The notes under the pieces are model-generated. The model did no database searches. It had not been told where the DNA came from and was given only the letters and a program-made list of their open reading frames with translations. From the IMG/VR virus record IMGVR_UViG_3300028558_000791, positions 1 to 64,000 of that record: 64,000 bases of DNA. One strand, 5' to 3'. Each line of letters opens with the position of its first letter. Within the stretch, counting starts at the first letter, position 1. Below, piece after piece: positions 35,788 to 63,676 of the stretch. The position numbers and the translations under genes are program-made.

Positions 35788-37419
35788 ATGTCAAACAAGA
35801 ACTTATTCTCAAACAAGAACAAGCTAACGGTATCTGTTTCTAAGAAGGTAACTCTGCCAACCAACACGGTTAATGAGGCAGGTGGAACTGCATATAAGCT
35901 GTCCGACAAGGCTGCTTTGGCGCAGTACGCCATGACTGGTACGTTCAACGGTACATACTATGCATCCGATGCAGATCAACTTAAGAAGGTCCTTGAGTTG
36001 GCAAACAAGGTAGATCCAAAGTTCGTCGCTAAGCTGGCAGTGTACGCACGCCAGAGAGGCTTGATGAAGGATATGCCTGCCGTTCTTGCAGCCGTCATTG
36101 CTGGAAGAGACGCTGACCTATTGGCTACGATTTTCGATAGAGTAATCGACAATCCAAAGATGCTTCGTAACTTCGTTCAGATCATCCGATCTGGCGCAAC
36201 TGGCCGTAAGTCCTTGGGAACTCGCCCAAAGAAGTTGGTACAGAAGTATCTTGAGAACTTGACCGACGAGCAGTTGTTCAAGGCTGATGTTGGTAACGAT
36301 CCGTCGTTGCAGGACATCATCAAGTTGGTTCACCCAAAGCCAACTAACAAGCAGCGTTCTGCGTTGTACGGTTACTTGCTCGACAAGGAGTACAACAAGA
36401 GAGACCTCGTGTCTTTGGCACAACAGTTCGAAGCATTCAAGAAGGATATGAAGGGAGAGATCCCAGATGTTCCGTTCCAGATGTTGACGGCTCTGCCATT
36501 GACTGATACGCACTGGAAGCAGATTGCTGAGAATGCAACCTGGAACCAGATCCGTATGAACCTCAATACGTTTGCTCGTCACAACGTATTGGCTGACAAG
36601 AAGCTGGTCGATGTTTTGGCAGCAAAGCTATCGGACCCAGAGCAGGTCAAGCGTTCCAAGACGTTCCCATATCAGTTGTTCACCACTTACTTGAACGTGG
36701 ACGCCACGATTCCAAGCAAGCTGACGAACGCATTGCAAGATGCGGCTGATTCTTCTTTGGATAACATTCCTGAGTTCCCAGGAAAGGTCTTCGTAATGGT
36801 TGACACTTCTGGTTCTATGGGCTCTGCCGTCACCGGTAAGAGAGTAAATCCAAAGACTGGTAAGGAGGAATCCTTTACGACTAAGGCTCGATGCGTAGAC
36901 GTGGCAGCACTTTTCGCAGCAGCAATCTTGCGCAAGAATCCAGACACTGAGATTGTGCCATTCGACACCTCAGTACATGTTGGTCACCGATTCAATCCAC
37001 GTGATTCGATCATGACCAATGCAAAGACTCTAGCTTCATTCGGTGGTGGTGGTACCAACTGCTCCGCTGCTTTGGAGTATGTCAACAAAAAGGCTGGCAA
37101 GGGCGACCTTGTCATCTACGTGTCTGACAATGAGTCATGGGTTGATACGAAGGCATCTAACTCAGGTGTGTTCGGATACTACCGCCGTAATGGCACTGCC
37201 ACTATGGAAGAGTGGAATAAGTTCGCAGCCCGTAACAAGGGTGCAAAGCTTGTCTGTATCGACATTCAACCAAACTCCTCCACCCAAGCACACGACAGGG
37301 ATGACATCCTGAACGTGGGAGGATTCAGTGACCAGGTGTTCGATGTAATCGCAAGATTCGCCGAGCTTGGAAACAACAAGGATCTCTGGATCAAGACGAT
37401 CGAAGACGTCAAACTCTAA
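35788..37419 (+). CDS. rsr: Ro60 / TROVE domain RNA-binding protein (Rsr) with vWA domain
   Basis: NEAGGTAY, TGTFNGTYY, LVHPKP, RMNLNTFARH, MIDAS VDTSGSM, GGGTNCS, VSDNESW. Confidence 0.93.
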   Translation: MSNKNLFSNKNKLTVSVSKKVTLPTNTVNEAGGTAYKLSDKAALAQYAMTGTFNGTYYASDADQLKKVLELANKVDPKFVAKLAVYARQRGLMKDMPAVLAAVIAGRDADLLATIFDRVIDNPKMLRNFVQIIRSGATGRKSLGTRPKKLVQKYLENLTDEQLFKADVGNDPSLQDIIKLVHPKPTNKQRSALYGYLLDKEYNKRDLVSLAQQFEAFKKDMKGEIPDVPFQMLTALPLTDTHWKQIAENATWNQIRMNLNTFARHNVLADKKLVDVLAAKLSDPEQVKRSKTFPYQLFTTYLNVDATIPSKLTNALQDAADSSLDNIPEFPGKVFVMVDTSGSMGSAVTGKRVNPKTGKEESFTTKARCVDVAALFAAAILRKNPDTEIVPFDTSVHVGHRFNPRDSIMTNAKTLASFGGGGTNCSAALEYVNKKAGKGDLVIYVSDNESWVDTKASNSGVFGYYRRNGTATMEEWNKFAARNKGAKLVCIDIQPNSSTQAHDRDDILNVGGFSDQVFDVIARFAELGNNKDLWIKTIEDVKL

Positions 37420-37427
37420 TCGTCAGA

Positions 37428-37492
37428 GCCTCTAACCGAAGGGTGCCCGAGTGAAGACCGGGTTGCTGATGCAAGTTCAGCATGGAGGCCCA
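37428..37492 (+). ncRNA. Compact tRNA-like RNA directly after Ro60
   Basis: GCCTCTA/TGGAGGC plus CCA; GCTGA-TGCAAGT-TCAGC T-like arm; CCCG/CGGG arm. Confidence 0.55.
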
Positions 37493-37494
37493 TC

Positions 37495-37911
37495 ATGAAT
37501 AAGTTAGAAGATTTAGTGGCGGCAGCAAGACTAGCCGCCCAACATTCGTACAGTCCATACAGCAACTTCAAAGTTGCATCCGCCGTAGAAATGGAAGATG
37601 GAAGCATCTTTAGCGGCTCTAATGTAGAGAATGCGTCTTACGGTCTCACTATCTGTGCAGAGCGCAACGCAATCTTTCAAGCTGTGTCTAAGGGACATCG
37701 CCTAATAAAACGTATCATTGTCTACGCTCCTTCACCAACTGTTCGTACTGGCCCTTGTGGAGCCTGTAGGCAGGTAATTAAAGAATTTGCCGATGAATAT
37801 ACACTAATCATTGGCGCCTGTAACTCAGACGATATATTAACTTTTACAATGGAAGATTTGTTACCAAAGAGTTTTGGTCCCGATAATCTTCTAAAGAAAA
37901 GAAACCAATGA
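37495..37911 (+). CDS. cdd: Cytidine deaminase
   Basis: YSPYS, NVENASYGLTICAER, PCGACRQ. Confidence 0.93.
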   Translation: MNKLEDLVAAARLAAQHSYSPYSNFKVASAVEMEDGSIFSGSNVENASYGLTICAERNAIFQAVSKGHRLIKRIIVYAPSPTVRTGPCGACRQVIKEFADEYTLIIGACNSDDILTFTMEDLLPKSFGPDNLLKKRNQ

Positions 37912-38753
37912 TTAAGCGAAATGGCGTAGAGGTAATGAACGCCCGCACTAAAAACGTCTCTATTGCCAAAGAAACAATCGCTATAATCAACAACCAAAAA
38001 TACACCAATCTCAATGGAGATACAGTAGATATCTCAGTAGAAATGGATGCGGCCATAGACGGCACTCATTACTATGAGGCTGACGTTTTAGTCGGCATGC
38101 CCGCCGATCAGGCTCCCATTCACGCTACGATTGAGGTAGTAAATGAGACTACTGCTCAAGCTGCTGTTCGATTGCAAGCTAAAGGAAAAACTAATCTAGT
38201 TGCCCTTAACTTCGCTTCAGCGCGTAATCAAGGTGGAGGCTTTCTTTCTGGAGCTTTGGCTCAAGAAGAAGACTTGTGTAGGGCTTCTGGCCTATATGGT
38301 TGCCTGAAACGCAAACCATTGTTCTACAATGCAAACATCCTGTGTGACGATGCATTCTATACAAATGGAGTTCTCTACTCACCTAACGTTCCGTTCTTTA
38401 GGGATGATCATAATCTGTTTTTAGAGAAGCCTTTTCCGCTTTCTATCGTCTCAGCACCAGCTCCTAACCTTTCTAGCACCAAGTCGAACATCGACCCTAA
38501 AGTATTAACCTCTCTTATTAGAGAGCGTACTGTTAGGATTCTACAGGTGGCTCATGCCAATGGGCATAAGAACATCATTTTAGGTGCCTGGGGCTGTGGA
38601 GCCTTCGGAAATGATCCTGAAATGGTATCAAAAGCATTTATGTTGGCCCTAACTAAAGTTCCATATTTCGAGCATGTAACCTTTGCGGTATATGATACCA
38701 GAGAGCCGTACGTTTTATATGAAACGTTCAAAGAAGTCTGTAACGCTGTATAG
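37908..38753 (+). CDS. TIGR02452/DUF2263 bacterial-type poly(ADP-ribose) glycohydrolase
   Basis: LNFASA..GGGF..GALAQEEDLCRAS, LGAWGCGAFGN. Confidence 0.9.
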   Translation: MIKRNGVEVMNARTKNVSIAKETIAIINNQKYTNLNGDTVDISVEMDAAIDGTHYYEADVLVGMPADQAPIHATIEVVNETTAQAAVRLQAKGKTNLVALNFASARNQGGGFLSGALAQEEDLCRASGLYGCLKRKPLFYNANILCDDAFYTNGVLYSPNVPFFRDDHNLFLEKPFPLSIVSAPAPNLSSTKSNIDPKVLTSLIRERTVRILQVAHANGHKNIILGAWGCGAFGNDPEMVSKAFMLALTKVPYFEHVTFAVYDTREPYVLYETFKEVCNAV

Positions 38754-39315
38754 ACCAACCGGCCCAAAAGAGTTAGATTTGATTAAAAAGTCTAACTATA
38801 AGAAGTTCCCGCCCCGCTTGCCTGAACAACCAATTTTCTATCCAGTTCTTACAAAAGAGTATGCGGTAAAGATTGCACGAGATTGGAATGTAAAAGCTTC
38901 CGGAATAGGTTTTGTACTAGAATTCAAGGTCCGAAAGGATTTTCTAGACAAATATCCAGTGCAAGTAGCTGGCGGCAATTCTCATCAGGAGTATTGGATT
39001 CCAGCGGAAGAATTAGAAGACTTCAATCAAGCTCTAGTGGGCGAGATAAAGGTCACTGAGACGTACCAAGAGTGGTACATTTACATCCTAAAGTGTTCTG
39101 ATGGTACTTTGTACACAGGTATCACGAACAATCTGGGTAAACGAATCAAACAACATAACGAGGGTAAAGGCGCAAAGTACACGAAGGGTCGTGGTCCCGT
39201 TGCCCTTGTTAAGTTTTTCACCCGATTAACTAAGGGTGAAGCCCTGAAACTTGAATATCAGATCAAACAACTCTCTAAAGAAGAGAAACTGAATTACAAT
39301 GAGCAGAAGAGGTAA
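38719..39315 (+). CDS. Conserved LYRP..RLPEQPIFYPV domain fused to GIY-YIG nuclease
   Basis: C-terminal YIYILKCSDGTLYTGITNN..R..HN..GAKYT. Confidence 0.75.
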   Translation: MKRSKKSVTLYRPTGPKELDLIKKSNYKKFPPRLPEQPIFYPVLTKEYAVKIARDWNVKASGIGFVLEFKVRKDFLDKYPVQVAGGNSHQEYWIPAEELEDFNQALVGEIKVTETYQEWYIYILKCSDGTLYTGITNNLGKRIKQHNEGKGAKYTKGRGPVALVKFFTRLTKGEALKLEYQIKQLSKEEKLNYNEQKR

Positions 39316-39871
39316 AAAAAGTTTTAGTCCTCAATTTGAAAGAGACTACACTTTTTATCTGTCTAATAAAGATAACTTCACATTTGCTGGTTCAGATCTA
39401 AAATTACAATATCGTATTCAGTTTCCAGGAGAACCGGAACCAATTGGTAAGGATGAAGGGGGAAAGGACATTAATGTTCCATTCTCTATTCCTTACTCAG
39501 CAACTGGTAAAACTGCCAAGGTATGTTTCTATTCGCTAGATAGCGAAGGTAAATGTAAACCTTGTGCAGAACCGCAACTTCTAGTAGAAATTCTCACTTG
39601 TAAGGCCGCAATCAATCTACAGATTAAGATTTGGTCACAGAGTCGAGCCGAGTATACTTTATCCAAGATTGAGTTACAAGAATATCTTGATCACTATCAA
39701 GCTCCTGAATGGGTTTTCAAAGCGATTGAGAATCAAAAACTTAAGATTTTGAAGGAATGGAGCGCCGAAAAGCTTTATAAATCCGACTATTACAAGCGGG
39801 CTTATGAGCTTCATATGGGCGAATTTTTAGAAGAGATGCGTGGTTCCGGTGTTATATTAGATCCGAAATGA
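39299..39871 (+). CDS. Hypothetical protein
   Basis: Packed ORF. Confidence 0.55.
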   Translation: MSRRGKKSFSPQFERDYTFYLSNKDNFTFAGSDLKLQYRIQFPGEPEPIGKDEGGKDINVPFSIPYSATGKTAKVCFYSLDSEGKCKPCAEPQLLVEILTCKAAINLQIKIWSQSRAEYTLSKIELQEYLDHYQAPEWVFKAIENQKLKILKEWSAEKLYKSDYYKRAYELHMGEFLEEMRGSGVILDPK

Positions 39872-39893
39872 TCAAACACTGATTAGGAACATA

Positions 39894-40595
39894 ATGACCA
39901 AGGAAAACTTTACATCTATCAACGTAATCATCGACGCATCTGGCTCGATGTCTCACCTCACCCATGACACCATCGGGAACTTTAATACCTTCTTGCAAGA
40001 GCAAAAGGCATTCCCCGGTGAAGCTGTCTTCACTCTTTGTACTTTCAATACTGATTATCACTTGGTCCATGACTTCGTGAAGATTGCTGGTGTCCCTAGC
40101 TTGGATGCTAAGACCTATGTTCCACAAGGTGGAACCGCTTTGTTAGATGCTATGGGATCAACTATTGATTCTGTTGGTAAGAAGTTGGCCGCATTACCAG
40201 AAGAGGAACGTCCTTCTAAGGTTATTTTCCTCATCATCACTGATGGTCATGAAAACTCCAGTCGTCGTTTTGATGCGGCTCAAGTTAAGTCTATGGTCGA
40301 ACATCAGAAGGATACTTATAGTTGGGAGTTCGTATTCATGGGCGCTAACATTGATGCTATCTCTGCCGGCACCAACCTTGGTATCTCTATGCAGAACACT
40401 CTCAACTACGTTCCAAGTGCCGCTGGTACCGAGAATTTGTACAAGAGTATCAGTTCTAACGTAAGCAGCTATCGTGGCTCCAACTCTTCTAGAGTTGACT
40501 TTTTCAATCAGACTCAACAGGGCGTTGGCTCAGTTACTCCTCCAGTCGTAGTTACAACTACCACTACGGTAACTCCTCCAAAGACCTCAAAGTAA
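39894..40595 (+). CDS. von Willebrand factor A domain protein
   Basis: IIDASGSM, GGTALLDA, ITDGHENSS. Confidence 0.88.
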   Translation: MTKENFTSINVIIDASGSMSHLTHDTIGNFNTFLQEQKAFPGEAVFTLCTFNTDYHLVHDFVKIAGVPSLDAKTYVPQGGTALLDAMGSTIDSVGKKLAALPEEERPSKVIFLIITDGHENSSRRFDAAQVKSMVEHQKDTYSWEFVFMGANIDAISAGTNLGISMQNTLNYVPSAAGTENLYKSISSNVSSYRGSNSSRVDFFNQTQQGVGSVTPPVVVTTTTTVTPPKTSK

Positions 40596-40599
40596 TATC

Positions 40600-40806
40600 A
40601 TGTGTGCCGTTTCAGTTATCTATGACATGTTTGGTGGACAACCAGACGATTGGTATACGCTGGAACGTATTGATCTTTTCAAACGTATGGTGGCTGATGC
40701 TCGACTCTTCGATGAGGAGTCGGGCCAGCCCGATTGCGAAGACCCTGAAAAAACTAAAGTTACTGAACGCATTGAAAAAATCGAAGAAGAACTAGAGCAG
40801 AAGTAA
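40600..40806 (+). CDS. Hypothetical phage protein
   Basis: MCAVSVIYD...QPDCEDPEK. Confidence 0.55.
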   Translation: MCAVSVIYDMFGGQPDDWYTLERIDLFKRMVADARLFDEESGQPDCEDPEKTKVTERIEKIEEELEQK

Positions 40807-40807
40807 A

Positions 40808-41416
40808 ATGACTAAAGCATTATATGTTGGTAGTTTCGACCCTATCACCAACGGTCATATTGATATTATGAAGCGTAGCTTACAGTTCTGTAAGCAACTG
40901 GTGATTGGGATAGGTATCAATCCTAACAAGACTACTATGTTTGATGAGCGGGAGAGGAACTCCATGATTTTTCAAACGATAGTGAAGGAGTTTGACTTCC
41001 TTCATTCAACCAATACTTCGGTTGCTTCTTTTCAGGGACTTACAGTAGAGTATGCTAAAGAAATTGGTGCAACGATTCTAATTCGCGGAATTAGATCCGT
41101 TTCTGATTTCGAATATGAAATTAATTTGGCCAACATCAACAAGGTTCTGGCCCCATCAATTGAAACAATTTTCCTGCCCACCAGTCCTGATCTGGCGGTT
41201 GTCTCCTCTTCAATGGTAAAAGAAATTGCAAAGTTGAACGGAGATATTTCAAGATTCGTACCCAGCTATATTGCCGAGAGGATTCATTCAAAATTCGGTT
41301 TCTTCAAGCATGGCAAGACAGAGATTGGCACTGATACTATCAATAGATTACGAGAAGCTACAGTAGCTATTGAGAAAGAATTGGGAATCAAACCAAAAGA
41401 TGAGGGCGAAAAATAA
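40808..41416 (+). CDS. coaD: Phosphopantetheine adenylyltransferase
   Basis: GSFDPITNGH, IRGIRSVSDFEYE, VSSSMVKEIA. Confidence 0.92.
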   Translation: MTKALYVGSFDPITNGHIDIMKRSLQFCKQLVIGIGINPNKTTMFDERERNSMIFQTIVKEFDFLHSTNTSVASFQGLTVEYAKEIGATILIRGIRSVSDFEYEINLANINKVLAPSIETIFLPTSPDLAVVSSSMVKEIAKLNGDISRFVPSYIAERIHSKFGFFKHGKTEIGTDTINRLREATVAIEKELGIKPKDEGEK

Positions 41417-41430
41417 AAATTAGCGACGGG

Positions 41431-41458
41431 TTGACGAGCTAATTTTTAAGACTACAAT
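41431..41458 (+). promoter_or_regulatory. sigma70-like promoter of the RNA cluster
   Basis: TTGACG-N16-TACAAT. Confidence 0.55.
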
Positions 41459-41561
41459 GTTCGTTACTTCGGAGGCGCAAACCAAAGAATAATCAAAAAA
41501 GAATAGTGTGATAAAAATCTAGGCATAGCGTGATATAATACATACGATTCACCATTTTCAT

Positions 41562-41644
41562 GGGGGAGTAGCTCAGCGAAAGAGCGCAAGGATACCGTAA
41601 GGAAAACCTTGAGGTCCCTGGTTCAATTCCAGGCTCCCCCACCA
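41562..41644 (+). ncRNA. tRNA-like RNA with 15-nt anticodon loop
   Basis: Intact acceptor, D and T arms plus ACCA; CAAGG-ATACCGTAAGGAAAA-CCTTG. Confidence 0.85.
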
Positions 41645-41708
41645 TTTCAGTAGTTGTCTGAAAGTTTACCAAAGCATTAGCCTGGTATTACAATCAAAAC
41701 AACATTAT

Positions 41709-41784
41709 GGGACTGTAGCTCAGTGTTAGAGCGTCGGATTAAAAACCCGAAGGTCGCAGGTTCAACTCCTCGCCAGTCCCACCA
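41709..41784 (+). tRNA. Atypical tRNA, anticodon AAA (Phe)
   Basis: GGGACTG/CAGTCCC plus ACCA; loop TTAAAAA; bulged T stem. Confidence 0.7.
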
Positions 41785-41790
41785 TCTAAT

Positions 41791-41877
41791 CCCTCGTAAT
41801 TGGATCCGTGGGAGGATCTCCGGTCTGTAAAACCGGCGCCAATGTGCTAGGTAGTTCGATTCTACTGCGGGGGACCA
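41791..41877 (+). tRNA. 8/4-fold tRNA (allo-tRNA/Sec-like), anticodon GTA
   Basis: 8-bp acceptor CCCTCGTA/TGCGGGGG, 4-bp T stem, 6-bp D stem, CCGGT-CTGTAAA-ACCGG. Confidence 0.75.
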
Positions 41878-41967
41878 AACTGTAAGAGGAGCTTCGGCTC
41901 CAGTATTTATGCGGTACAAACCAACTAAGTATTTACAGTCTGTTCAATGACAACTTAATATTTGTTT

Positions 41968-42044
41968 CGGGGACTGGCTCAACCTGGTAGAGCGTCTGTT
42001 TTGGGTACAGAAGGTTGCGAGTTCAAATCTCGCGTCCCCGACCA
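41968..42044 (+). tRNA. tRNA-Pro(TGG)
   Basis: Canonical cloverleaf, C1-G72, A73. Confidence 0.95.
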
Positions 42045-42047
42045 TAT

Positions 42048-42081
42048 CCTTCTTTTTGGGTTAAACCGAAGAGAGGGGCCA
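42048..42081 (+). ncRNA. Minihelix: 12-bp hairpin plus G-CCA
   Basis: CCTTCTTTTTGG-GTTAAA-CCGAAGAGAGGG-G-CCA. Confidence 0.6.
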
Positions 42082-42084
42082 TAA

Positions 42085-42159
42085 GCCTCTGTAGCTCAAG
42101 AAACAGAGCGTCGTCCGTTGAGGACGATGATGTAGGTGTAAAGCCTACTGGAGGCTCCA
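42085..42159 (+). tRNA. Atypical tRNA (loop CG-TTG-AG, T-loop TGTAAAG)
   Basis: All four stems pair; G33; T-CCA end. Confidence 0.7.
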
Positions 42160-42168
42160 TGTTACTAT

Positions 42169-42245
42169 GCCACTACTAGCTCAATTGGTTAGAGCACTGG
42201 ATTGTGGATCCGGGGGTTTCGGTTCGATTCCGAAGTTTGGTACCA
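42169..42245 (+). tRNA. tRNA-His(GTG)-like, imperfect acceptor
   Basis: CTGGA-TTGTGGA-TCCGG; lacks C73. Confidence 0.75.
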
Positions 42246-42353
42246 TGACGAATGTCCGAGTAGGATTACATTTTTATGCAAAAAAACCGATGGGGTTCGA
42301 TTCCCCTTTAGGGCTGGCGCCAGGCAAAACATCTTATTCATTTCTTGTCGTCA
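42246..42353 (+). ncRNA. Y RNA-like 1 (T-arm cargo)
   Basis: TGACGA-ATG..GAGTAGGAT-TACA / ATCTTATTC..TTG-TCGTCA; internal GGGG-TTCGATT-CCCC. Confidence 0.8.
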
Positions 42354-42355
42354 AT

Positions 42356-42432
42356 CAGAGAATGTTGTTTAATGGTTAGCATCCGTGCCCTGGAAGCATG
42401 TGGTCCCGGTTCGAATCCGGGTTCTCTGACCA
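42356..42432 (+). tRNA. tRNA-Pro(TGG), atypical loop
   Basis: CAGAGAA/TTCTCTG plus ACCA; CGTGC-CCTGGAA-GCATG. Confidence 0.75.
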
Positions 42433-42503
42433 ATGCCAGTATATCTGGAAACTAATGAAGAACATTATTGGTAGTTCTGTTCTCGATGAAGTTTCTTGCT
42501 GGT

Positions 42504-42619
42504 CATACCGAATGAGCTTTAAGAGCTACTCAGTCTTAATAAATAAGTGCATGGGATAGCTACCTTAAAAATAACCGTTATAGTTAAGGCTCATAAGGAA
42601 ACACAATTTTGTCGGTATG
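42504..42619 (+). ncRNA. Y RNA-like 2 (divergent)
   Basis: CATACCGA-ATG / TTTTG-TCGGTATG; second helix GAGCTTTAA/TTAAGGCTC; lacks GGATTACA. Confidence 0.6.
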
Positions 42620-42623
42620 TTTT

Positions 42624-42724
42624 TGGGATACATTAAGTTGGTAATCATTACGATTCTGGTTCGAGTGGTAGGAACACAAATCGGAAACGTAAGTGAGAAG
42701 GTTCGAATCCTTCTGTCCTGACCA
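42624..42724 (+). ncRNA. tRNA-like RNA with long replaced anticodon arm
   Basis: TGGGATA/TGTCCTG plus ACCA; GAAGG-TTCGAAT-CCTTC; arm TTAC-GATT..AATC..GTAA. Confidence 0.7.
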
Positions 42725-42727
42725 AAT

Positions 42728-42801
42728 GACTTTGTGGACAAATTATTAAGTCACTCCCGTTAGAGGGAGAGATGTAAGTGCAAGGCTTGCCAAGGTCACC
42801 A
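42728..42801 (+). ncRNA. tRNA-like RNA with 6-nt anticodon loop (GTTAGA)
   Basis: GACTTTG/CAAGGTC plus ACCA; CTCCC/GGGAG; T-loop TGCAAGG. Confidence 0.7.
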
Positions 42802-42802
42802 T

Positions 42803-43019
42803 GTAACAAATGCCCCGAGAGGATTACATTCATTAGGAGAACGAGGTCGTGGGTCCGAGTCCCACCACTGCTACCATCCCAAAGCACGTCATTAAATTGA
42901 AGGGACACTCGAAAGAGTGATGTTGCCTGACTTACTTAGCGAAAGCTATCTAAGTCCTCATAGCAGTGTAGCTCAGTTGGCAGAGCGCGAAAAACATCTT
43001 TTCAAATTTTTGTTGTTAC
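42803..43019 (+). ncRNA. Y RNA-like 3 containing a circularly permuted tRNA with internal CCA
   Basis: GTAACAA-ATG..GAGAGGAT-TACA / ATCTTTTC..TTG-TTGTTAC; T arm plus CACTGCT-A-CCA precedes AGCAGTG plus D arm. Confidence 0.85.
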
Positions 43020-43022
43020 TAT

Positions 43023-43056
43023 CTCCGCTGTAGGGTCAAACCTAAAGCGGGGACCA
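43023..43056 (+). ncRNA. Minihelix: 12-position hairpin plus A-CCA
   Basis: CTCCGCTGTAGG-GTCAAA-CCTAAAGCGGGG-A-CCA. Confidence 0.6.
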
Positions 43057-43348
43057 AAAGACCAATCGTATCGGTCTTTATGAGAGAGATACATTCCTCT
43101 CAAAAGCATCTAGTGGTCGTCCGTTATCACTGGAGCTAAATAGTTAGCGGGCAGTATTCAGGGTTTGCTCCAGCCGAATTATGAATACTATTATTGAGAT
43201 TAAATTTGTTGGGGGCGTATTCGGTTGCGCTTGATATTCCGAAACTCTAATGGGAGTGAATATAGTTCCATTGTAACACTCAGCTATAACGATTAAGTAA
43301 CTCAGAGTGTTGCGCTTTACTAGCAATAACAATGCATAGTATATGTAT

Positions 43349-43422
43349 TCCGAGGTCGTTCAACGGTAGGACGGGTCGCTGTTAACGACTCTATATTGGT
43401 TCGATTCCAGTCCTCGGAGCCA
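43349..43422 (+). tRNA. tRNA-Asn(GTT)
   Basis: Canonical; G73-CCA. Confidence 0.95.
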
Positions 43423-43428
43423 GAATAT

Positions 43429-43515
43429 TCTGTGGTAGCCTAATGGTAAGGCAGGTGGCTGTTAACCACCCGGTGGTAAAACACTTTCTAGGTTCGAGTC
43501 CTAGCTGCAGAGCCA
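43429..43515 (+). tRNA. tRNA-Asn(GTT) with long variable arm
   Basis: GGTGG-CTGTTAA-CCACC; V-arm GGTG-GTAAAA-CACT. Confidence 0.85.
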
Positions 43516-43624
43516 AATAATACGGGGATTGATTAGACCGAAATGATCCGTATTAGCTGTTATGTTTGGTCAATTCTGCATAACGACAGAAGCTATGTCC
43601 AGTAAAATGGAGTCGTCTTCTGAA

Positions 43625-43880
43625 GATGAATGCCGATAAGGATTACACTAATACAACCGAGCCTCACGCCGTAGAATGCCCGCAAGGATTTCATTCCACA
43701 AATACCGGGTGGCTCACATCTCCCACTACATTACAAGAGATGATGAAAATTAAACTGAGATGTCTGACAAGCCTGCCTACCAGTTAGAGTAACAGGCTCA
43801 GTGGTGTAACTGATAATACACTGTGATTACTTGTTTACTTGTAAACAAAATAATTGCTATCTTTATCAACTTTAGTCATC
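43625..43880 (+). ncRNA. Y RNA-like 4 (large unknown cargo)
   Basis: GATGA-ATG..GATAAGGAT-TACA / ATCTTTATC..TAG-TCATC. Confidence 0.7.
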
Positions 43881-43887
43881 AAAATAT

Positions 43888-43962
43888 TCTGCTCTAGTGT
43901 AATTAGCACGGCGATCTCTTTGTAGGTCGAGGGTCATGGTTTAAGTCCATGGGGCGGAGCCA
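43888..43962 (+). ncRNA. tRNA-like RNA (Gln-like T1-A72, G73) with irregular anticodon arm
   Basis: TCTGCTC/GGGCGGA plus GCCA; CGATCT-CTTTGT-AGGTCG. Confidence 0.65.
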
Positions 43963-43982
43963 AAGCAAATCATGAGAAAGCA

Positions 43983-44411
43983 ATGTTTACTTCAACCGGA
44001 ATCCTTCAATATGATCCTGGTCAGGGTCTAAAACATTTCGATCCATGGTGGGCTCTTCTAGCCTGTGACGATGAAGTATCTAGGTATTATGCCTGGTTAC
44101 TAAAGAGACACGGAGTAGAAGTCTACCCTAACGATAAAGGGTTGTGGGGAACACACGTTTCAGTTTTGAAAGGTGCCGTCCCTCCCAATCAAGATAAGTG
44201 GGGCAAGTATCAAGACTTCGAAGTAGAAATCCATCTCAATCATCTTGTCCGTTATGATAACGGGAAACATGCTTGGGTAGATGTATACTCAGAAGATTTA
44301 TCAGCAATCCGACAGGAGTTAGGCTTCGATGCCAAGCCCTGGTACCATCTGACAATTGGTAGGTTGGTGAGACCATTTGATGTGGACTTTACCAAATATG
44401 GCATAACCTGA
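43983..44411 (+). CDS. 2H phosphoesterase family protein
   Basis: Two HxS/T motifs (THVSV, YHLTI) about 65 aa apart. Confidence 0.7.
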   Translation: MFTSTGILQYDPGQGLKHFDPWWALLACDDEVSRYYAWLLKRHGVEVYPNDKGLWGTHVSVLKGAVPPNQDKWGKYQDFEVEIHLNHLVRYDNGKHAWVDVYSEDLSAIRQELGFDAKPWYHLTIGRLVRPFDVDFTKYGIT

Positions 44412-44427
44412 TATATAATCAGCACAT

Positions 44428-44502
44428 ACCCTCGTACGCATCGGGTGAGGCGGGAAGCTTGTCAAGCTTTTGAGGGCGGTTCGAGTCCGCTCGGGGGTGC
44501 CA
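44428..44502 (+). tRNA. tRNA-Asp(GTC)
   Basis: GAAGC-TTGTCAA-GCTTT; G73-CCA. Confidence 0.85.
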
Positions 44503-44569
44503 AAGTCAAATGCCTTGATAGGATTACATTTTACCAAAAGAAAACATCTTATCTACTTTTTGTTGACTT
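44503..44569 (+). ncRNA. Y RNA-like 5 (minimal, stem only)
   Basis: AAGTCAA-ATG..GATAGGAT-TACA / AAAC-ATCTTATC..TTG-TTGACTT. Confidence 0.8.
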
Positions 44570-44572
44570 TTT

Positions 44573-44666
44573 CGATCACGCGTAGCTGGTTGCTCGGGCG
44601 AGACTTATAATCTTGCAAGGACTGATATTCCGTAACGGCAGGGTTCGATTCCCTGGTGATCGACCA
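44573..44666 (+). tRNA. Atypical tRNA-Ile(TAT), 6-bp anticodon stem, long variable region
   Basis: CGATCAC/GTGATCG plus ACCA; GCGAGA-CTTATAA-TCTTGC. Confidence 0.75.
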
Positions 44667-44669
44667 TAT

Positions 44670-44746
44670 GGCACTGTAGCCCAAAGGCAGGAGGCACCTG
44701 ACTTAAAATCAGTTCAGTGTGGGTTCAAATCCCACCAGTGCTACCA
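44670..44746 (+). tRNA. tRNA-Leu(TAA) with short variable loop
   Basis: CTGA-CTTAAAA-TCAG; no type II arm. Confidence 0.85.
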
Positions 44747-44765
44747 ATAAAGATATAGTTAATAT

Positions 44766-44841
44766 GGAACTTGAGCAAGTATGGTTATTGCATCGGTCTG
44801 AAAAGCCGACAAACGGGGTTCGATCCCCCGAGGTTCCACCA
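44766..44841 (+). tRNA. tRNA-Phe(GAA)
   Basis: TCGGT-CTGAAAA-GCCGA; ACCA. Confidence 0.9.
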
Positions 44842-44842
44842 A

Positions 44843-45193
44843 ATGAGAATTGTTCAAAAGCCTTGGGGCCATGAAGAAATCTGGGCAGAAACTCCCAACT
44901 ATGTTGGAAAAGTTCTCTCAATCAATCCTGGTCACAGACTCTCAAGACAATATCATAATCTCAAAGAAGAAACATTCAGAGTTCTTTTTGGGACGTTGAC
45001 GCTAGAAATAGGTGAGGGTGACGATATAGTTACTCACGTATTAACGGCAGGTCAAACTTTTCACTGTCCTCCAAAGACAGTTCATAGAATGATTTGCCAA
45101 CGAGTTATCAACTATGCACCAGTAAATGTATTGGAAGTATCAACCAATCATTTAGATGATGTAGTAAGATTAGAAGACGATTATAAAAGATAA
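44843..45193 (+). CDS. Cupin domain protein (mannose-6-phosphate isomerase C-terminal-like)
   Basis: KPWG, LSRQYH..KEE, HR, DDVVRLEDDY. Confidence 0.85.
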   Translation: MRIVQKPWGHEEIWAETPNYVGKVLSINPGHRLSRQYHNLKEETFRVLFGTLTLEIGEGDDIVTHVLTAGQTFHCPPKTVHRMICQRVINYAPVNVLEVSTNHLDDVVRLEDDYKR

Positions 45194-45270
45194 CGTGCTA
45201 TAGCTCAGTTGGTTAGAGTGCCTCTCTGATAAGGAGGAAGTCCCAGGTTCGAATCCCGGTAGCACGACCA
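45194..45270 (+). tRNA. tRNA-Ile(GAT)
   Basis: Canonical cloverleaf. Confidence 0.92.
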
Positions 45271-45481
45271 GTAACGAATGCAGTTAGGATTACATCCATA
45301 ACGACCTTAAAGTAGTTGACAGAGCCGCGAGGCGCTGAATCGATGGCAACAAAACGATCACCAGGTAATGCTGAGGTCCATCAGACTCTTGAGTCGAAGT
45401 TGCGGGGCGAACGGGAAGTATCTCGAAAGAGACTTTCAATGTGCCGGTCACACCCAGTATCTTAGCAATTTTTGTCGTTAT
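45271..45481 (+). ncRNA. Y RNA-like 6 (large unknown cargo)
   Basis: GTAACGA-ATG..GTTAGGAT-TACA / ATCTTAGC..TTG-TCGTTAT. Confidence 0.78.
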
Positions 45482-45485
45482 ACAT

Positions 45486-45561
45486 GGGACGGTAGCTCAG
45501 TGGTTAGAGCGCAACGCTGATAACGTTGAAGTCGATGGTTCGATTCCATCTCGTCCTACCA
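45486..45561 (+). tRNA. tRNA-Ile(GAT)
   Basis: Canonical cloverleaf. Confidence 0.95.
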
Positions 45562-45697
45562 ATGGCAAGCCATTAAAGCCCTTCCTTCTATAATTAATTG
45601 ATAAAACAGGACTTTTGCTTTCTTGCCAGATGATATTACATTTATGGCCCCACGCTTTAGTGGGTCACCATAAATAATAAATGAAGGTCGCACCTTC

Positions 45698-45786
45698 AGC
45701 CTGCCCACATGGATGGAAACTGTGGCGTCACCTTGGTAAACCAAGTAGTAAAGTGACAAGCCTGCCCACATGGTTGGAAACTGTGG
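45698..45786 (+). repeat. 28-nt direct repeat x2 with 33-nt hairpin spacer
   Basis: AGCCTGCCCACATGGWTGGAAACTGTGG at 45698 and 45759. Confidence 0.85.
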
Positions 45787-45789
45787 AAA

Positions 45790-45866
45790 GAATCGTTTAG
45801 CTCAATGGTAGAGCGTGGTCACTAGTGACGACTAAGATGCGGGTTCGATTCCCGTAATGATTCCCA
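45790..45866 (+). ncRNA. His-like tRNA (G-1:C73) with 9-nt anticodon loop
   Basis: GAATCGTT/AATGATTC-CCA; TGGTC-ACTAGTGAC-GACTA. Confidence 0.75.
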
Positions 45867-45894
45867 AGGGGACAACATTGTTGCTCCCTCAATC

Positions 45895-46048
45895 GAGGCA
45901 AATGCACCGAAGGTTTACATTTGGAATAATCATATCGTCGTAAGACGGTCGCAGGTTCGAATCCTGCAACTTCCGAAAGGAAGTTTGGCTGAGTGGTCTA
46001 AAGCAATGATGCTGAAAAGCATGCTAACTTTCAAATTTTTGTTGCTTC
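45895..46048 (+). ncRNA. yrlA: Y RNA-like 7, classical YrlA architecture
   Basis: GAGGCAA-ATG / TTG-TTGCTTC; T arm GCAGG-TTCGAAT-CCTGC, acceptor AACTTCC-GAAA-GGAAGTT, then D arm. Confidence 0.85.
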
Positions 46049-46050
46049 AT

Positions 46051-46179
46051 CTCCCGCTAGTTTAAAACGAAACACTTGTTATAGAGGACGTATACTTAAT
46101 CTATGATGAGCAAGTAGTAGAGCAAAACACCTCCACGCTAAGGAGGAGATTGCGAGTGCAAGTCTCGCAAGGGAGACCA
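46051..46179 (+). ncRNA. tRNA-like RNA with ~50-nt hairpin inserted in the D loop
   Basis: CTCCC/GGGAG plus ACCA; CCTCC-ACGCTAA-GGAGG; GCGAG-TGCAAGT-CTCGC. Confidence 0.7.
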
Positions 46180-50072: not shown

Positions 50073-50149
50073 GGGTCTTTTGATGTAAAGGCTGGCCTCT
50101 AGACTTTAGTGCTAGAGGACATCGGGTTCGACTCCCGAATGATCCGCCA
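50073..50149 (+). ncRNA. tRNA-like RNA, no D stem, loop CT-TTA-GT
   Basis: GGGTC/GATCC plus GCCA; CCTCTAG/CTAGAGG; TCGGG-TTCGACT-CCCGA. Confidence 0.65.
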
Positions 50150-56566: not shown

Positions 56567-56898
56567 ACATGAGCTTAGCTTGGTCAAAGGATATGGAATT
56601 GGATCCTGGTACGTTTGGAGGTTCTCCGGCATGCCATGTTTTAGTAGATATGATGAATCACAATGTTATTCCTATTATAGAGAAGCATCGTGTTTTATCA
56701 TTCATCAATGATGCTATCTATCAATTCAAGTGGTTATCCACTGTGAAGGAGTATGGCGTCAAGGAGAGGTCTATGGTTCTGATGAGGGACGATATTCTAT
56801 CTAGGGTGGATCATATGCCATATCCTGCCAAGTTTAATTCACATCTGAAGAACGTGATAACTCACCACTTCAGACGATACTTGAAAGAAGAGACCTAG
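56563..56898 (+). CDS. Hypothetical protein
   Basis: Packed ORF. Confidence 0.5.
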   Translation: MNMSLAWSKDMELDPGTFGGSPACHVLVDMMNHNVIPIIEKHRVLSFINDAIYQFKWLSTVKEYGVKERSMVLMRDDILSRVDHMPYPAKFNSHLKNVITHHFRRYLKEET

Positions 56899-57250
56899 AC
56901 AATCGCTCCCGTAAGGAGAGGAAAGTCGGAGCTACGTAGGGCAATTTGCTGGCTAACGGCCAGGCGCAGTGATGCGACAGATAGTGCAACAGAAAAGAAA
57001 CCGCCATGAATCCGCCAGGCCCGAAAGGGAGCAACGGTAGATGGTAAGGGTGAAATGGTGGGGTAAGAGCCCACCGCACCTATAGTGATATAGGTGGCAA
57101 GGTAAACCTCAGATGTAGCAAGCTAAATAGAGAGTGACTTGTCCGGTCAATACTCTCGGGTTAGTGCTGGAGCCATTAGGTAACTAACGGCCAAGATTAA
57201 TGATTGTCTCGATTTATAGACAGGACTCCGCTTATAGGGTGTCTTCTTTC
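56883..57250 (+). ncRNA. rnpB: RNase P RNA, bacterial type A
   Basis: GAGGAAAGTCGGAG, AGTGCAACAGAAA, GGGTGAAA..GGTAAGAG, GGTAAACC, ACAGGACTCCGCTTA; P1 GAAAGAAGA/TCTTCTTTC. Confidence 0.93.
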
Positions 57251-62755: not shown

Positions 62756-63676
62756 ATGAATAAGATTGCAACATTAGTAGGATGTGCCATTGGAGATGCT
62801 CTTGGCAATCCATTTGAGATGTGGAGTGTCCATGAGCCCAAGCTTAAAGAGTGGGATGGTCAGTTCAAAGCTGGCGGTACTTTCTGGGTAGGAGAGGCCG
62901 GACAATATACCGATGATACCCTAATGAGCCTTGCTTTGTCATATTCTTTGCTTGAGAAGAGCGGATTCGATCAAGAGCACGTAGGTCTTCAGTACTTGGC
63001 TTGGATGGAGTCTGGTAACACTCGCGGTATTGGCGGGACTACTCACAGAGCTTTGACACGAATGAAGAACGGAGCATCCGCTCTTGAGAGTGGTGTTACC
63101 CATAACGATGGCAAGCCTGCCTCTGGTAATGGAACTGCTATGAGAGCCACACCAATTGGCCTCTGGTACCGTAAAGATATCGGCAAGTTGATTGAGGTTG
63201 CAATGGCGGACGCATCCATCACTCATAATTCATTTGAACCCAAGATGGGTTCTGTGGCGGTTGCACTAGGTACTGCATTGATTGCTAATGGTGCAACTGA
63301 CATGATTGAGGTCTTAGAAGAGGTAGCTGAGGTAATCTCTGAATCTATTGTCAAAGAGAAGTTAGTATTGGCCTTAACCCATCTAAAACTGGGTACCGAA
63401 CATTTTGAGGCCCTTGCGCAGATCGGCGTCAATGGCTATGTTCCAGAGACGGTTGGCGCGGCATTCTATTGTTTAGGGGCCAACGCAAACTATAGAGATA
63501 CTGTAGTGTTAGCTGTCAAGGCTGGCGGAGATACTGATACCACTGCGGCGATTGCTGGTGGCATGGCTGGTACTTTATACGGACTTGATGGTATTCCATT
63601 AGAATATAAGGATAAAGTAGAGAATTTCGAGTTATTGCAATCATTGACTGATGAACTTGTCAATAATGAGATATAA
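62756..63676 (+). CDS. ADP-ribosylglycohydrolase (DraG/ARH family)
   Basis: GDALG, YTDDT, GNGTAMR, GGDTDT. Confidence 0.93.
   Translation: MNKIATLVGCAIGDALGNPFEMWSVHEPKLKEWDGQFKAGGTFWVGEAGQYTDDTLMSLALSYSLLEKSGFDQEHVGLQYLAWMESGNTRGIGGTTHRALTRMKNGASALESGVTHNDGKPASGNGTAMRATPIGLWYRKDIGKLIEVAMADASITHNSFEPKMGSVAVALGTALIANGATDMIEVLEEVAEVISESIVKEKLVLALTHLKLGTEHFEALAQIGVNGYVPETVGAAFYCLGANANYRDTVVLAVKAGGDTDTTAAIAGGMAGTLYGLDGIPLEYKDKVENFELLQSLTDELVNNEI

What the first reader, a model, noticed from the sequence alone, without database searches (positions are those of the whole stretch)
35788..46048. Ro60 with an array of seven modular Y RNAs: constant Ro-binding stem, variable cargo
Seen: seven elements (42246, 42504, 42803, 43625, 44503, 45271, 45895) share a terminal helix whose sequence differs but whose pairing is kept: TGACGA/TCGTCA, CATACCGA/TCGGTATG, GTAACAA/TTGTTAC, GATGA/TCATC, AAGTCAA/TTGACTT, GTAACGA/TCGTTAT, GAGGCAA/TTGCTTC. 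In each, ATG follows on the 5' side and a U-rich tract ending T(T/A)G precedes on the 3' side. Six have a second helix ending GG(A/T)T followed by TACA. Sizes run from 67 to 256 nt with unrelated interiors. Known: bacterial Ro60 (Rsr) binds Y RNAs through a terminal stem with a GNCGAANG-like 5' strand, YrlA RNAs carry a permuted tRNA module, and described loci usually have one to a few Y RNAs. Inference: this phage uses Ro60 as a common chassis for an expanded set of RNA adaptors or decoys, each with a different effector module.
Basis: partly seen in the sequence, partly recalled or inferred. Interest (0 to 1): 0.95.

Follow-up and report, generated by a model that had tools for sequence, protein, structure and literature searches.

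The report
Phage Ro60 and its Y RNAs
A giant soil phage carries the ring-shaped RNA-binding protein Ro60 and, threaded between its tRNA genes, seven small RNAs built on the docking frame of known bacterial Y RNAs; this is real, but related bacteria keep up to seven such RNAs beside their own Ro60 gene.

Summary
Six of the seven listed elements (42246, 42803, 43625, 44502, 45271, 45895) share one frame: a terminal stem, AUG(C), a loop, a second helix ending GG(A/U)U, UACA(U), then a variable interior, the return strand, a loop ending UU(U/A)G, and the return of the stem. A seventh good copy lies outside the window at G000 76352-76473. The 42504 element keeps only the outer half of the frame.

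This frame is the consensus of Rfam YrlB and YrlA. The published GNCGAAN0-1G motif is the stem end plus AUG.

A model built mostly from RNAs beside bacterial Ro60 genes finds exactly these six in the window. In 101 Planctomycetota genomes, matches to it go with Ro60 (p=1.6e-10). Both helices covary.

Ro60 binding itself was not tested.

It is less unusual than claimed. Among 80 bacterial Ro60 loci, 75 carry 1-7 such RNAs, mostly in tandem.

Three things are particular here. The RNAs sit flush between tRNA genes. Two have large modules that are not tRNA-like. One YrlA-like RNA has a split acceptor stem with an encoded ACCA.

Verdict: a new member of a known kind, of moderate interest.

The parts
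35788..37419 (+). Ro60 (Rsr) gene. The longest ORF starts at 35734; relatives align from the ATG at 35788.
   Evidence: Pfam vWA_Ro60 9.2e-14 and TROVE 3e-9. PDB matches: phage phiLo Ro60 9KOP 3.4e-12 and D. radiodurans Rsr 2NVO 9.2e-9, with the MIDAS-like stretch VDTSGSMG. It is 50-75% identical to phage and bacterial Ro60.
41431..41458 (+). Promoter-like site (TTGACG-16-TACAAT) ahead of the first tRNA of the array. It may be the start of a polycistronic transcript.
   Evidence: Consensus scan, 10 of 12 positions matched. No + strand terminator-like site follows an element. This is an inference only.
42246..42353 (+). Y RNA E1 (108 nt). Frame TGACGA|AUGUCC|GAGUAGGAU|UACAU ... AUCUUAUUC|AUUUCUUG|UCGUCA. 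GACGAAUG fits GNCGAANG exactly. The interior has a T-arm-like hairpin at 42292-42306.
   Evidence: (49.8 bits). It starts directly after the CCA of the tRNA at 42172-42245 and ends 2 nt before the tRNA at 42356.
42504..42619 (+). E2, a doubtful or divergent member. It has an 8-bp stem CAUACCGA/UCGGUAUG, CGAAUG and UUUUG-UCGG. The inner helix is followed by UACUC, not GGAU-UACAU.
   Evidence: It scores 11.4 bits with R2 when only 301 nt are searched, and only the outer half aligns. No orthologue was seen in relatives. A loose descriptor of this outer half gives about 10 chance hits per strand in the genome.
42803..43019 (+). Y RNA E3 (217 nt), YrlA-like. T arm 42849-42865; acceptor 3' strand plus ACCA 42866-42876; an insert of about 85 nt; acceptor 5' strand 42962-42968; D arm 42971-42986.
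   Evidence: R2 45.0 bits, E 5.6e-10, not in the seed. Orthologues L011:16156-16298 and L012:17196-17324. The interior is 84-96% identical over 26-45 nt to RNAs beside bacterial Ro60. Coordinates. An encoded NCCA is seen in only 7 of 97 bacterial counterparts.
43625..43880 (+). Y RNA E4 (256 nt). Frame GAUGA|AUGCC|GAUAAGGAU|UACAC ... AUCUUUAUC|AACUUUAG|UCAUC. The large interior has no tRNA-like part.
   Evidence: R2 30.1 bits, E 1.1e-5, not in the seed. Orthologues L011:18308-18528 and L012:18674-18871 keep the frame and several interior hairpins. No match in bacterial loci.
44502..44570 (+). Y RNA E5 (68 nt), the minimal YrlB-like form: the frame plus a short A-rich loop.
   Evidence: Aligns end to end with Rfam YrlB (22.3 bits; gathering score 97). 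R2 63 bits. It lies between tRNA-Asp (ends 44502) and the tRNA starting at 44573.
45271..45481 (+). Y RNA E6 (211 nt). Frame GUAACGA|AUGCA|GUUAGGAU|UACAU ... AUCUUAGC|AAUUUUUG|UCGUUAU. The large interior has no tRNA-like part.
   Evidence: R2 43.1 bits, E 2e-9, not in the seed. A shorter orthologue lies at L011:15963-16072. It starts right after tRNA-Ile (ends 45270) and ends 4 nt before tRNA-Ile at 45486.
45895..46048 (+). Y RNA E7 (154 nt), YrlA-like. T arm 45951-45967; closed 7-bp acceptor hairpin with a GAAA loop 45968-45985; D arm 45987-46004.
   Evidence: Rfam YrlA 24.2 bits over the whole model, from the tRNA-like part only. R2 35.4 bits, E 3.2e-7, not in the seed. Orthologue L012:20895-21040. 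In related contigs from other samples it is 98-99% identical, while the neighbouring sequence is about 88% identical.
56887..57250 (+). Phage-encoded RNase P RNA (class A). It may process the tRNA/Y RNA precursors. Its link to the Y RNAs is an inference.
   Evidence: Rfam RF00010, 272.5 bits, full length.

Best explanation
The elements are Y RNAs of the bacterial YrlA/YrlB kind, and the phage's own Ro60 is their partner.

Each RNA closes its two ends into a 5-8 bp stem. The junction with a second helix carries the conserved letters (R-A|AUGC on the 5' side, UUKG|U-Y on the 3' side, then ..GGAU|UACAU). By homology, this is where the Ro60 ring docks. The interior is a free module:
- a full tRNA look-alike (T arm, acceptor stem, D arm) in E3 and E7;
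- a T arm only in E1 and in the copy at 76.35 kb;
- almost nothing in E5;
- large phage-specific folds in E4 and E6.

The genes lie flush between tRNA genes on one strand. They are therefore most likely cut out of the same long precursors by the enzymes that mature tRNAs. RNase P cutting at the next tRNA's 5' end would leave a 2-4 nt tail on the Y RNA.

Once made, the RNAs would gate the Ro60 ring and tether it to different partners. The phage has no PNPase of its own, so host PNPase is one candidate, alongside tRNA-handling enzymes. This would point Ro60 at misfolded or damaged structured RNA during infection.

Shown here: the gene, the RNAs' shared frame, covariation, homology to curated Y RNAs, co-occurrence with Ro60, and the tRNA-flush layout. 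Inferred: transcription and processing, Ro60 binding, tethering, and the biological role.
For: - Ro60 gene: TROVE and vWA_Ro60 domains; homologous to solved Ro60/Rsr structures.
- The frame equals the Rfam YrlB consensus and the two ends of Rfam YrlA. It contains the GNCGAAN0-1G and YUAY features of Chen et al. 2014 (PMC4201824).
- The strict descriptor gives 7 hits in the genome against a mean of 0.67 in shuffles.
- The same frame lies next to Ro60 in 75 of 80 bacterial loci, with 241 hits on the Ro60 strand and 0 on the other. Rfam YrlA hits above the gathering score fall on the same coordinates.
- Model R2 finds E3, E4, E6 and E7, none of them in its seed, at E from 1e-5 to 6e-10, and nothing else in the window.
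- In 101 Planctomycetota genomes: 10 have both Ro60 and an R2 match, 1 has R2 only, 3 have Ro60 only, and 87 have neither (Fisher p=1.6e-10).
- Covariation: 97.3% of cells paired, 13 of 15 pairs with compensatory changes, score 0.706 against 0.204 shuffled (0 of 500) and 0.05-0.16 when slid. In 24 phage copies the terminal stem has 158 cells and no mismatch.
- A Ro60-blind pattern scan found a complete 178-kb phage. Its three copies lie directly upstream of its Ro60.
- tRNA-flush ends appear in this genome and in relatives.
- Precedents: the D. radiodurans Yrn2-tRNA-Asp-Yrn1 precursor, and RNase P cleavage plus CCA addition of M. smegmatis YrlA. Phage phiLo Ro60 binds two phage Y-like RNAs and host PNPase in vitro.
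Against: - No Rfam Y RNA family reaches its gathering score in the window (24.2 against 69; 22.3 against 97).
- The core CGA of GNCGAANG is replaced by CAA or UGA in four copies.
- The RNAs lie 4.8-8.6 kb from Ro60, and one lies 39 kb away. That is outside the 4-kb rule of Chen et al., and five unrelated genes lie in between.
- There is no evidence of transcription or of discrete ends. The RNA-labelled runs held only short contigs from relatives, and those may be DNA.
- The genome has no RtcB and no PNPase or RNase PH, so any nuclease partner would have to come from the host.
- Ro60 binding was not tested.
Confidence: 0.8

Rival explanations
1. The RNAs are tRNA look-alike decoys that work without Ro60. 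They would soak up host tRNA-cutting or tRNA-modifying defence enzymes, or tRNA-processing enzymes. The shared frame would then be only a stable clamp.
For: E1, E3, E7 and the 76.35-kb copy carry T arms. E3 has a full acceptor stem with an encoded ACCA. They sit inside a tRNA array of a phage that carries about 58 tRNAs, a tmRNA and RNase P RNA.
Against: E2, E4, E5 and E6 have no tRNA-like part yet keep the frame. The frame's unpaired letters are conserved from phages to four bacterial phyla, and across genomes it goes with Ro60. That points to a protein contact with Ro60 rather than a mere clamp.
Confidence: 0.1
2. They are structured spacers of the tRNA operon. In this view they are processing or stability signals that guide nucleases cutting the long precursor, and have no life of their own as RNAs.
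For: They abut tRNA ends within 0-4 nt. No promoter or terminator of their own was found.
Against: In most bacterial loci the same RNAs stand in tandem beside Ro60 with no tRNA nearby: only 12 of 234 abut a tRNA. In the complete phage G001 they sit directly upstream of Ro60. Most tRNA junctions in this genome have no such element.
Confidence: 0.05
3. They are decaying leftovers of a bacterial rsr locus that the phage picked up, and are no longer used.
For: The Ro60 is 50-55% identical to bacterial ones. E2 looks half-decayed. L011:15963-16023 first looked truncated.
Against: Six to eight copies are kept in at least three related phages whose Ro60 differs by 25-33%. The orthologues hold syntenic positions and show compensatory changes. 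E7 is 98-99% conserved where its neighbours are about 88%.
Confidence: 0.03
4. They are short protein-coding genes that start at the conserved ATG, as one is annotated in Myxococcus phage Mx1.
For: GenBank CDS WNM70101.1 covers the Mx1 element. ORF lists show ATG-started ORFs at some elements.
Against: The frame after the ATG stops after 2-8 codons in E1, E3 and E5. Conservation follows base pairing, not codons.
Confidence: 0.01

Closest known systems
Salmonella Typhimurium YrlB (Rfam RF02565) and other short Rsr-bound Y RNAs
   Same: E5 aligns end to end with the family consensus. It has the same order of parts and the same unpaired letters..GA AUG C....GGAU UACAU....AUC....UUUG U... It is a short hairpin-like RNA with a small loop.
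   Different: The stem sequences differ and the RNA is AT-rich (28% G+C). The score is 22.3 bits against a gathering score of 97. It lies in a phage tRNA array rather than in an rsr-rtcBA operon.
YrlA (Rfam RF02553; Chen et al. 2014, PMC4201824), the tRNA-mimicking Y RNA
   Same: E3 and E7 have the T arm, acceptor stem and D arm in that order inside the Ro60-docking frame. E3's interior is 84-96% identical over 26-45 nt to RNAs beside bacterial Ro60.
   Different: There is extra sequence between the frame and the tRNA-like part, so Rfam aligns only the latter (24.2 bits against 69). E3's acceptor stem is interrupted by about 85 nt and is followed by an encoded ACCA, which is rare (7 of 97) among the bacterial copies examined.
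Mycobacterium smegmatis YrlA, and the D. radiodurans Yrn2-tRNA-Asp-Yrn1 precursor (PMC4201824)
   Same: These are precedents for a Y RNA with a 7-bp acceptor stem that is cut by RNase P and receives CCA, and for Y RNAs made on one precursor with a tRNA.
   Different: Here the CCA is already in the DNA. Up to eight Y RNAs are interleaved with dozens of tRNAs, and the genome brings its own RNase P RNA. None of this processing was tested.
Thermus phage phiLo Ro60 with Yrl1 and Yrl2 (PMC12135203); Y RNAs of mycobacteriophages, CcrColossus and phage G
   Same: A phage-encoded Ro60 with phage-encoded Y-like RNAs. phiLo Ro60 is the best solved-structure match. In vitro it binds its RNAs and host PNPase.
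   Different: phiLo has two RNAs directly upstream of Ro60. Here there are seven or eight, several kb downstream and scattered through tRNA arrays. The two Ro60 proteins are only about 23% identical.
Tandem Y RNA sets beside Ro60 in Acidobacteriota, Planctomycetota, Verrucomicrobiota and Myxococcota
   Same: The same frame, the same strand as Ro60, and 1-7 copies per locus (mode 2-3). Lengths run from 62 to 280 nt, and two thirds have a T arm. Some contigs also carry large tRNA arrays with Y RNAs interleaved.
   Different: They usually lie directly downstream of Ro60 in a tight tandem, are G+C-rich, and are rarely flush with tRNAs (12 of 234). The E4 and E6 modules have no counterpart there.

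Membership tests
Bacterial Y RNA (YrlA/YrlB class) | Encoded near a Ro60/Rsr gene on the same strand (Chen et al. used <=4 kb) | tested here: inconclusive
   Same strand and same genome, but 4.8-8.6 kb downstream, with one copy 39 kb away. In the related complete phage G001 the copies lie 80-400 nt upstream of Ro60. Across 101 whole genomes the frame goes with Ro60.
Bacterial Y RNA (YrlA/YrlB class) | GNCGAAN0-1G motif near the 5' end | tested here: met
   Exact in E1 and in the 76.35-kb copy (GACGAAUG). One letter off in E6 and E2. CAAAUG or UGAAUG in E3, E4, E5 and E7. The motif turns out to be the stem end plus the invariant AUG.
Bacterial Y RNA (YrlA/YrlB class) | The 5' and 3' ends pair in a terminal stem, followed by an internal loop and a second helix; conserved YUAY after that helix | tested here: met
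   Folds. Covariation (97.3% paired; 13 of 15 pairs compensatory). UUAC within GGAU-UACAU is present in six copies.
Bacterial Y RNA (YrlA/YrlB class) | Reaches the curated Rfam gathering score (RF02553 69 bits; RF02565 97 bits) | tested here: not met
   Best scores are 24.2 bits (YrlA, E7) and 22.3 bits (YrlB, E5). A model built from Ro60-adjacent RNAs, some of which do pass the Rfam score, scores the six copies at 30-63 bits.
YrlA subfamily (tRNA-mimicking) | Module with T arm, acceptor-like stem and D arm, in that order | tested here: met
   Met for E3 and E7. T arm only in E1 and the 76.35-kb copy. Absent in E2, E4, E5 and E6.
Bacterial Y RNA (YrlA/YrlB class) | Bound by Ro60/Rsr, and dependent on it for stability | not testable with these tools
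   Needs RIP, gel shift or a Ro60 deletion. Only co-occurrence and homology were available.
Ro60/Rsr protein | TROVE (HEAT-repeat ring) domain followed by a vWA domain with a MIDAS motif | tested here: met
   Pfam TROVE and vWA_Ro60. Aligns to 9KOP and 2NVO, with VDTSGSMG at the MIDAS position. No fold was predicted.

The most novel reading that the evidence does not exclude
This phage clade may run a self-contained RNA-surveillance and tRNA-maturation unit. It would comprise one Ro60 ring, seven or eight Y RNAs released from tRNA precursors by the phage's own RNase P RNA, and CCA-adding enzymes. Each Y RNA would aim Ro60 at a different partner. The split-acceptor E3 type would be processed into a two-piece RNA with a free, tRNA-like ACCA end that acts as a decoy or is even charged. 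The large E4 and E6 modules would recruit partners not yet known for any Y RNA.
Probability: 0.2. Interest if true: 0.65.

Novelty: new member of a known kind. Interest (0 to 1): 0.4.

Why it matters
Y RNAs are the least understood partners of Ro60, and few bacterial or phage examples have been studied.

This locus gives seven natural variants on one docking frame in one genome. They include a minimal one, two tRNA mimics (one with a closed acceptor stem, one with an open stem ending in ACCA) and two large modules of unknown kind. That makes a ready-made panel for asking what the frame does and what the modules recruit.

The side result may matter more. A simple descriptor of the frame finds one to seven Y RNAs beside Ro60 in 75 of 80 bacterial loci from several phyla. 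Most fall below the Rfam thresholds, so current annotation probably misses most bacterial and phage Y RNAs.

Myxococcus phage Mx1 is cultured and has Ro60 plus two such RNAs. It offers a tractable system.

Tried and rejected
- Rfam at gathering scores found no Y RNA in the window. Only the E-value mode and the printed consensus lines revealed the kinship.
- My first loose descriptors were swamped by chance hits, about 100 per genome. They had to be tightened.
- Model R1, built from three short copies, was too narrow. It missed all copies with long interiors, even with filters off, and it found nothing in whole bacterial genomes. R2 replaced it.
Only four loci were real. Two of them are fragments without Ro60 and say nothing either way.
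- Pfam TROVE is a poor detector for this Ro60 clade (20-27 bits). I replaced it with a profile of the phage proteins.
- The search for transcripts gave only DNA metagenomes, plus RNA-labelled runs with short contigs from relatives. There was no evidence for or against transcription.
- A near-identity search of the phage collection found nothing.
- TerL_ATPase, Terminase_6C and HK97-capsid Pfam models were silent. The phage nature was then shown by tail sheath, PhuZ-like tubulin and helicase PHROGs.
- I considered and rejected protein-coding genes, plain terminators or promoters, and tRNA dimers scoring as false YrlA. Chen et al. warn of that last artefact, and the weak YrlA hit at 43372-43475 is one such tRNA-Asn pair.
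- Two reviews on bacterial Y RNAs were not held in the library.

Full report
WHAT IS THERE

The window is the first 64 kb of a 480,838-bp virus record from a rhizosphere metagenome. The record is a tailed jumbo phage. It encodes a tail sheath, a PhuZ-like tubulin and replicative helicases. It also carries about 58 tRNA genes, a tmRNA and an RNase P RNA.

The ORF at 35734/35788-37419 (+) is an intact Ro60. It has TROVE and vWA_Ro60 domains. It is homologous to the solved Ro60 of Thermus phage phiLo and to D. radiodurans Rsr.

Five unrelated genes follow: a deaminase, a PARG, a GIY-YIG protein, two unknowns and an NMNAT-like enzyme. At about 41.5 kb a long + strand tRNA array begins behind a promoter-like site at 41431-41458.

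THE OBSERVATION

All seven helix pairs, the ATG, the U-rich tract ending T(T/A)G and the GG(A/T)T-TACA feature are present as described. Six elements share one architecture. These are E1 42246-42353, E3 42803-43019, E4 43625-43880, E5 44502-44570, E6 45271-45481 and E7 45895-46048. The order of parts is:
- stem S1 (5-8 bp);
- AUG(C);
- a 2-4 nt loop;
- helix H2 (7-9 bp, ending GG(A/U)U);
- UACA(U/C);
- a variable interior;
- the return strand of H2;
- an 8-9 nt loop ending UU(U/A)G;
- the return strand of S1.

A strict descriptor of this frame finds seven copies in the whole genome. All are on the + strand and all lie in tRNA arrays. The seventh is at G000 76352-76473, between two tRNA-Gly genes. 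Thirty shuffled genomes gave a mean of 0.67 hits and a maximum of 3.

E2 (42504-42619) keeps the stem, CGAAUG and UUUUG-UCGG, but not the GGAU-UACAU half. It scores 11.4 bits and has no orthologue, so I treat it as doubtful.

WHAT IT IS

At gathering scores, Rfam sees only tRNAs and RNase P. In E-value mode, YrlB aligns end to end with E5 and YrlA aligns with the interior of E7.

The printed consensus lines settle the matter. YrlB reads ..GGcgcGa AUG CU gGcCgGGAU UACAU ... AUCCcGgC uAUuuAUUUG uCgcgC... YrlA begins cggCga AUGC and ends UuG ucGccg. That is the frame of the window's elements, unpaired letter for unpaired letter.

The GNCGAAN0-1G motif that Chen et al. (PMC4201824) proposed as the Rsr contact is the end of S1 plus the AUG. 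Their conserved YUAY is the UUAC of GGAU-UACAU.

EVIDENCE FROM ELSEWHERE

Phage relatives. Ro60 relatives at 67-75% identity on three viral contigs, and at 52-55% in Myxococcus phage Mx1, all have the same elements inside tRNA arrays on the Ro60 strand. Many are flush with tRNA ends.

A pattern scan that ignored Ro60 turned up a complete 178-kb phage. Its three copies lie directly upstream of its own Ro60.

Bacterial loci. A profile of the phage Ro60 proteins fetched 80 bacterial loci with 50-55% identical Ro60, from Acidobacteriota, Planctomycetota, Verrucomicrobiota, Myxococcota and others.
- The descriptor gave 241 hits on the Ro60 strand and none on the other, in 75 of the 80 loci. Most are tight tandems just downstream of the gene.
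- After removing chimeric spans, the copies per locus were: 0 in 5 loci, 1 in 3, 2 in 27, 3 in 22, 4 in 13, 5 in 4, 6 in 3 and 7 in 3. Lengths run from 62 to 280 nt.
- Rfam YrlA matches above the gathering score fall on the same coordinates as descriptor hits.

Covariation. On 54 matches, 97.3% of cells pair and 13 of 15 pairs show changes on both sides. The covariation score is 0.706, against 0.204 in shuffles (0 of 500) and 0.05-0.16 when the partner is slid. In 24 phage copies, S1 has 158 cells without a single mismatch and 12 different 5-nt strands.

An independent model. Model R2 was built from that mostly bacterial alignment. It finds exactly the six elements in the window and nothing else at E<=1. 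E3, E4, E6 and E7 were not in its seed.

Co-occurrence. In 101 Planctomycetota genomes, 13 have Ro60 and 11 have R2 matches. Ten have both, one weak match stands alone, three have Ro60 only and 87 have neither (p=1.6e-10). In eight of the ten the matches sit next to Ro60.

THE MODULES

- E5 is minimal and YrlB-like.
- E7 has a T arm, a closed 7-bp acceptor hairpin with a GAAA loop, and a D arm.
- E3 has the same three parts. Its 7-bp acceptor stem is followed by a discriminator A and CCA, and then by about 85 nt before the 5' strand returns.
- The L011 orthologue of E3 also has ACCA, with a 16-nt gap between the acceptor strands. Among bacterial copies with such a stem, only 7 of 97 have NCCA and few have long loops.
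- E3's V/T region is 84-96% identical to bacterial Ro60-adjacent RNAs.
- E1 and the 76.35-kb copy have a T arm only.
- E4 (256 nt) and E6 (211 nt) have no tRNA-like part and no bacterial counterpart. They do have orthologues in the related phages.

So the cargo is variable, but the interiors are not all unrelated.

HOW IT MOST LIKELY WORKS

Shown: the frame, its homology to Rsr-bound Y RNAs, its tie to Ro60, and the flush tRNA layout. E1, E5, E6 and the 76.35-kb copy start 0 nt after an upstream CCA. E1, E5, E6 and that copy end 2-4 nt before the next tRNA.

Inferred:
- The array is transcribed as long precursors. The only evidence is the promoter-like site.
- tRNA-maturing enzymes release the Y RNAs. 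RNase P would set their 3' ends, and the phage brings its own RNase P RNA and two CCA-adding-type enzymes.
- Ro60 docks on the junction, and the modules tether it to partners.

The genome has no PNPase, RNase PH or RtcB. A nuclease partner would therefore come from the host, as proposed for phage phiLo. I put 0.8 on 'Y RNAs that are partners of the phage Ro60'. My confidence in any particular downstream role is much lower.

RIVALS

The alternatives are Ro60-independent tRNA decoys (0.1), mere operon spacers (0.05), decaying leftovers (0.03) and small ORFs (0.01). Each is weakened by three findings: the frame's conservation across phyla, its tie to Ro60, and pair-preserving change.

NOVELTY

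Phage Ro60 and phage Y RNAs are known, and a common docking part with variable modules is the standard model. Seven or eight copies is more than in Mx1 (2) or in the 178-kb phage G001 (3). It is also more than the described loci hold. It only equals the top of the range found here beside bacterial Ro60.

Three things are new in detail: the systematic threading of Y RNAs through a phage tRNA array, the E4 and E6 modules, and the split-acceptor E3 with an encoded ACCA. I found no paper that links Y RNAs with tRNA arrays.

I file this as a new member of a known kind, with an interest of 0.4.

LIMITS

- There are no transcript data.
- Binding was not tested.
- The descriptor and models were tuned on these sequences, although R2's seed was mostly bacterial.
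- Several 'bacterial' contigs with large tRNA arrays may themselves be phage DNA binned into MAGs.

Noticed in passing
window 56887-57250 (+): A full-length class A RNase P RNA (272.5 bits) is encoded by the phage, inside its tRNA region. A search of the held paper library found no paper naming both jumbo phages and RNase P RNA.
   Followed up: partly
window 50073-50149; G000 172924-172997 and 173183-173255; G000 170047-170403: Suppressor-type tRNAs are present: one with anticodon UUA and two with CUA. There is also a tmRNA. Together they hint at stop-codon read-through or recoding in part of the genome.
   Followed up: no
window 43022-43056, 46050-46179, 42621-42727, about 43885-43975: These tRNA-like pieces end in ACCA but are not called as tRNAs. 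One is a 35-nt acceptor-plus-T-arm minihelix right after E3. Another is a long piece with a T arm right after E7. Two others are degenerate.
   Followed up: no
L009 553-656 (Myxococcus phage Mx1, OR576727.2 about 45520-45625): The GenBank CDS WNM70101.1 ('hypothetical protein') lies on a Y RNA-like element and starts at its conserved AUG. It is probably a mis-called gene. Mx1 has Ro60, two such RNAs and a tmRNA, and it is a cultured phage.
   Followed up: partly
L138, L149, L208, L213, L180 (MAG and genome contigs): Ro60 with its Y RNAs lies beside arrays of 10-25 tRNA genes, with Y RNAs interleaved (for example L149 3445-3861). Either Ro60/Y RNA/tRNA-array islands are common in these bacteria, or these contigs are phage DNA.
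   Followed up: partly
80 bacterial Ro60 loci, L134-L213: Only a few of the 234 frame matches reach the Rfam YrlA gathering score: six matches in the ten loci tested. Current models probably miss most Y RNAs of these phyla.
   Followed up: partly
window 45894-46048, in runs X25 and X27: Contigs from aquatic and wastewater samples carry E7 at 98-99% identity, while the flanking sequence is about 88% identical or unrelated. This tRNA-mimic Y RNA is unusually well conserved among relatives.
   Followed up: no
window 9632-11242, 22781-23896, 34206-35393, 37908-38753, 40808-41416, 62756-63676: The window encodes a class II aminoacyl-tRNA synthetase (Asp/Lys/Asn type). It also encodes a set of NAD/ADP-ribose enzymes: two NMNAT-like proteins, a deoxyribosyltransferase with NUDIX, a PARG and an ADP-ribosylglycohydrolase.
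   Followed up: no
window 45701-45727 and 45761-45787: A direct repeat of about 27 nt (GCCTGCCCACATGG(A/T)TGGAAACTGTGG) lies just upstream of tRNA-Thr. Its meaning is unknown.
   Followed up: no
window 43372-43475: The weak Rfam YrlA match here spans the T arm of one tRNA-Asn and the D arm of the next. This is the tandem-tRNA artefact that Chen et al. warn about, not a Y RNA.
   Followed up: yes
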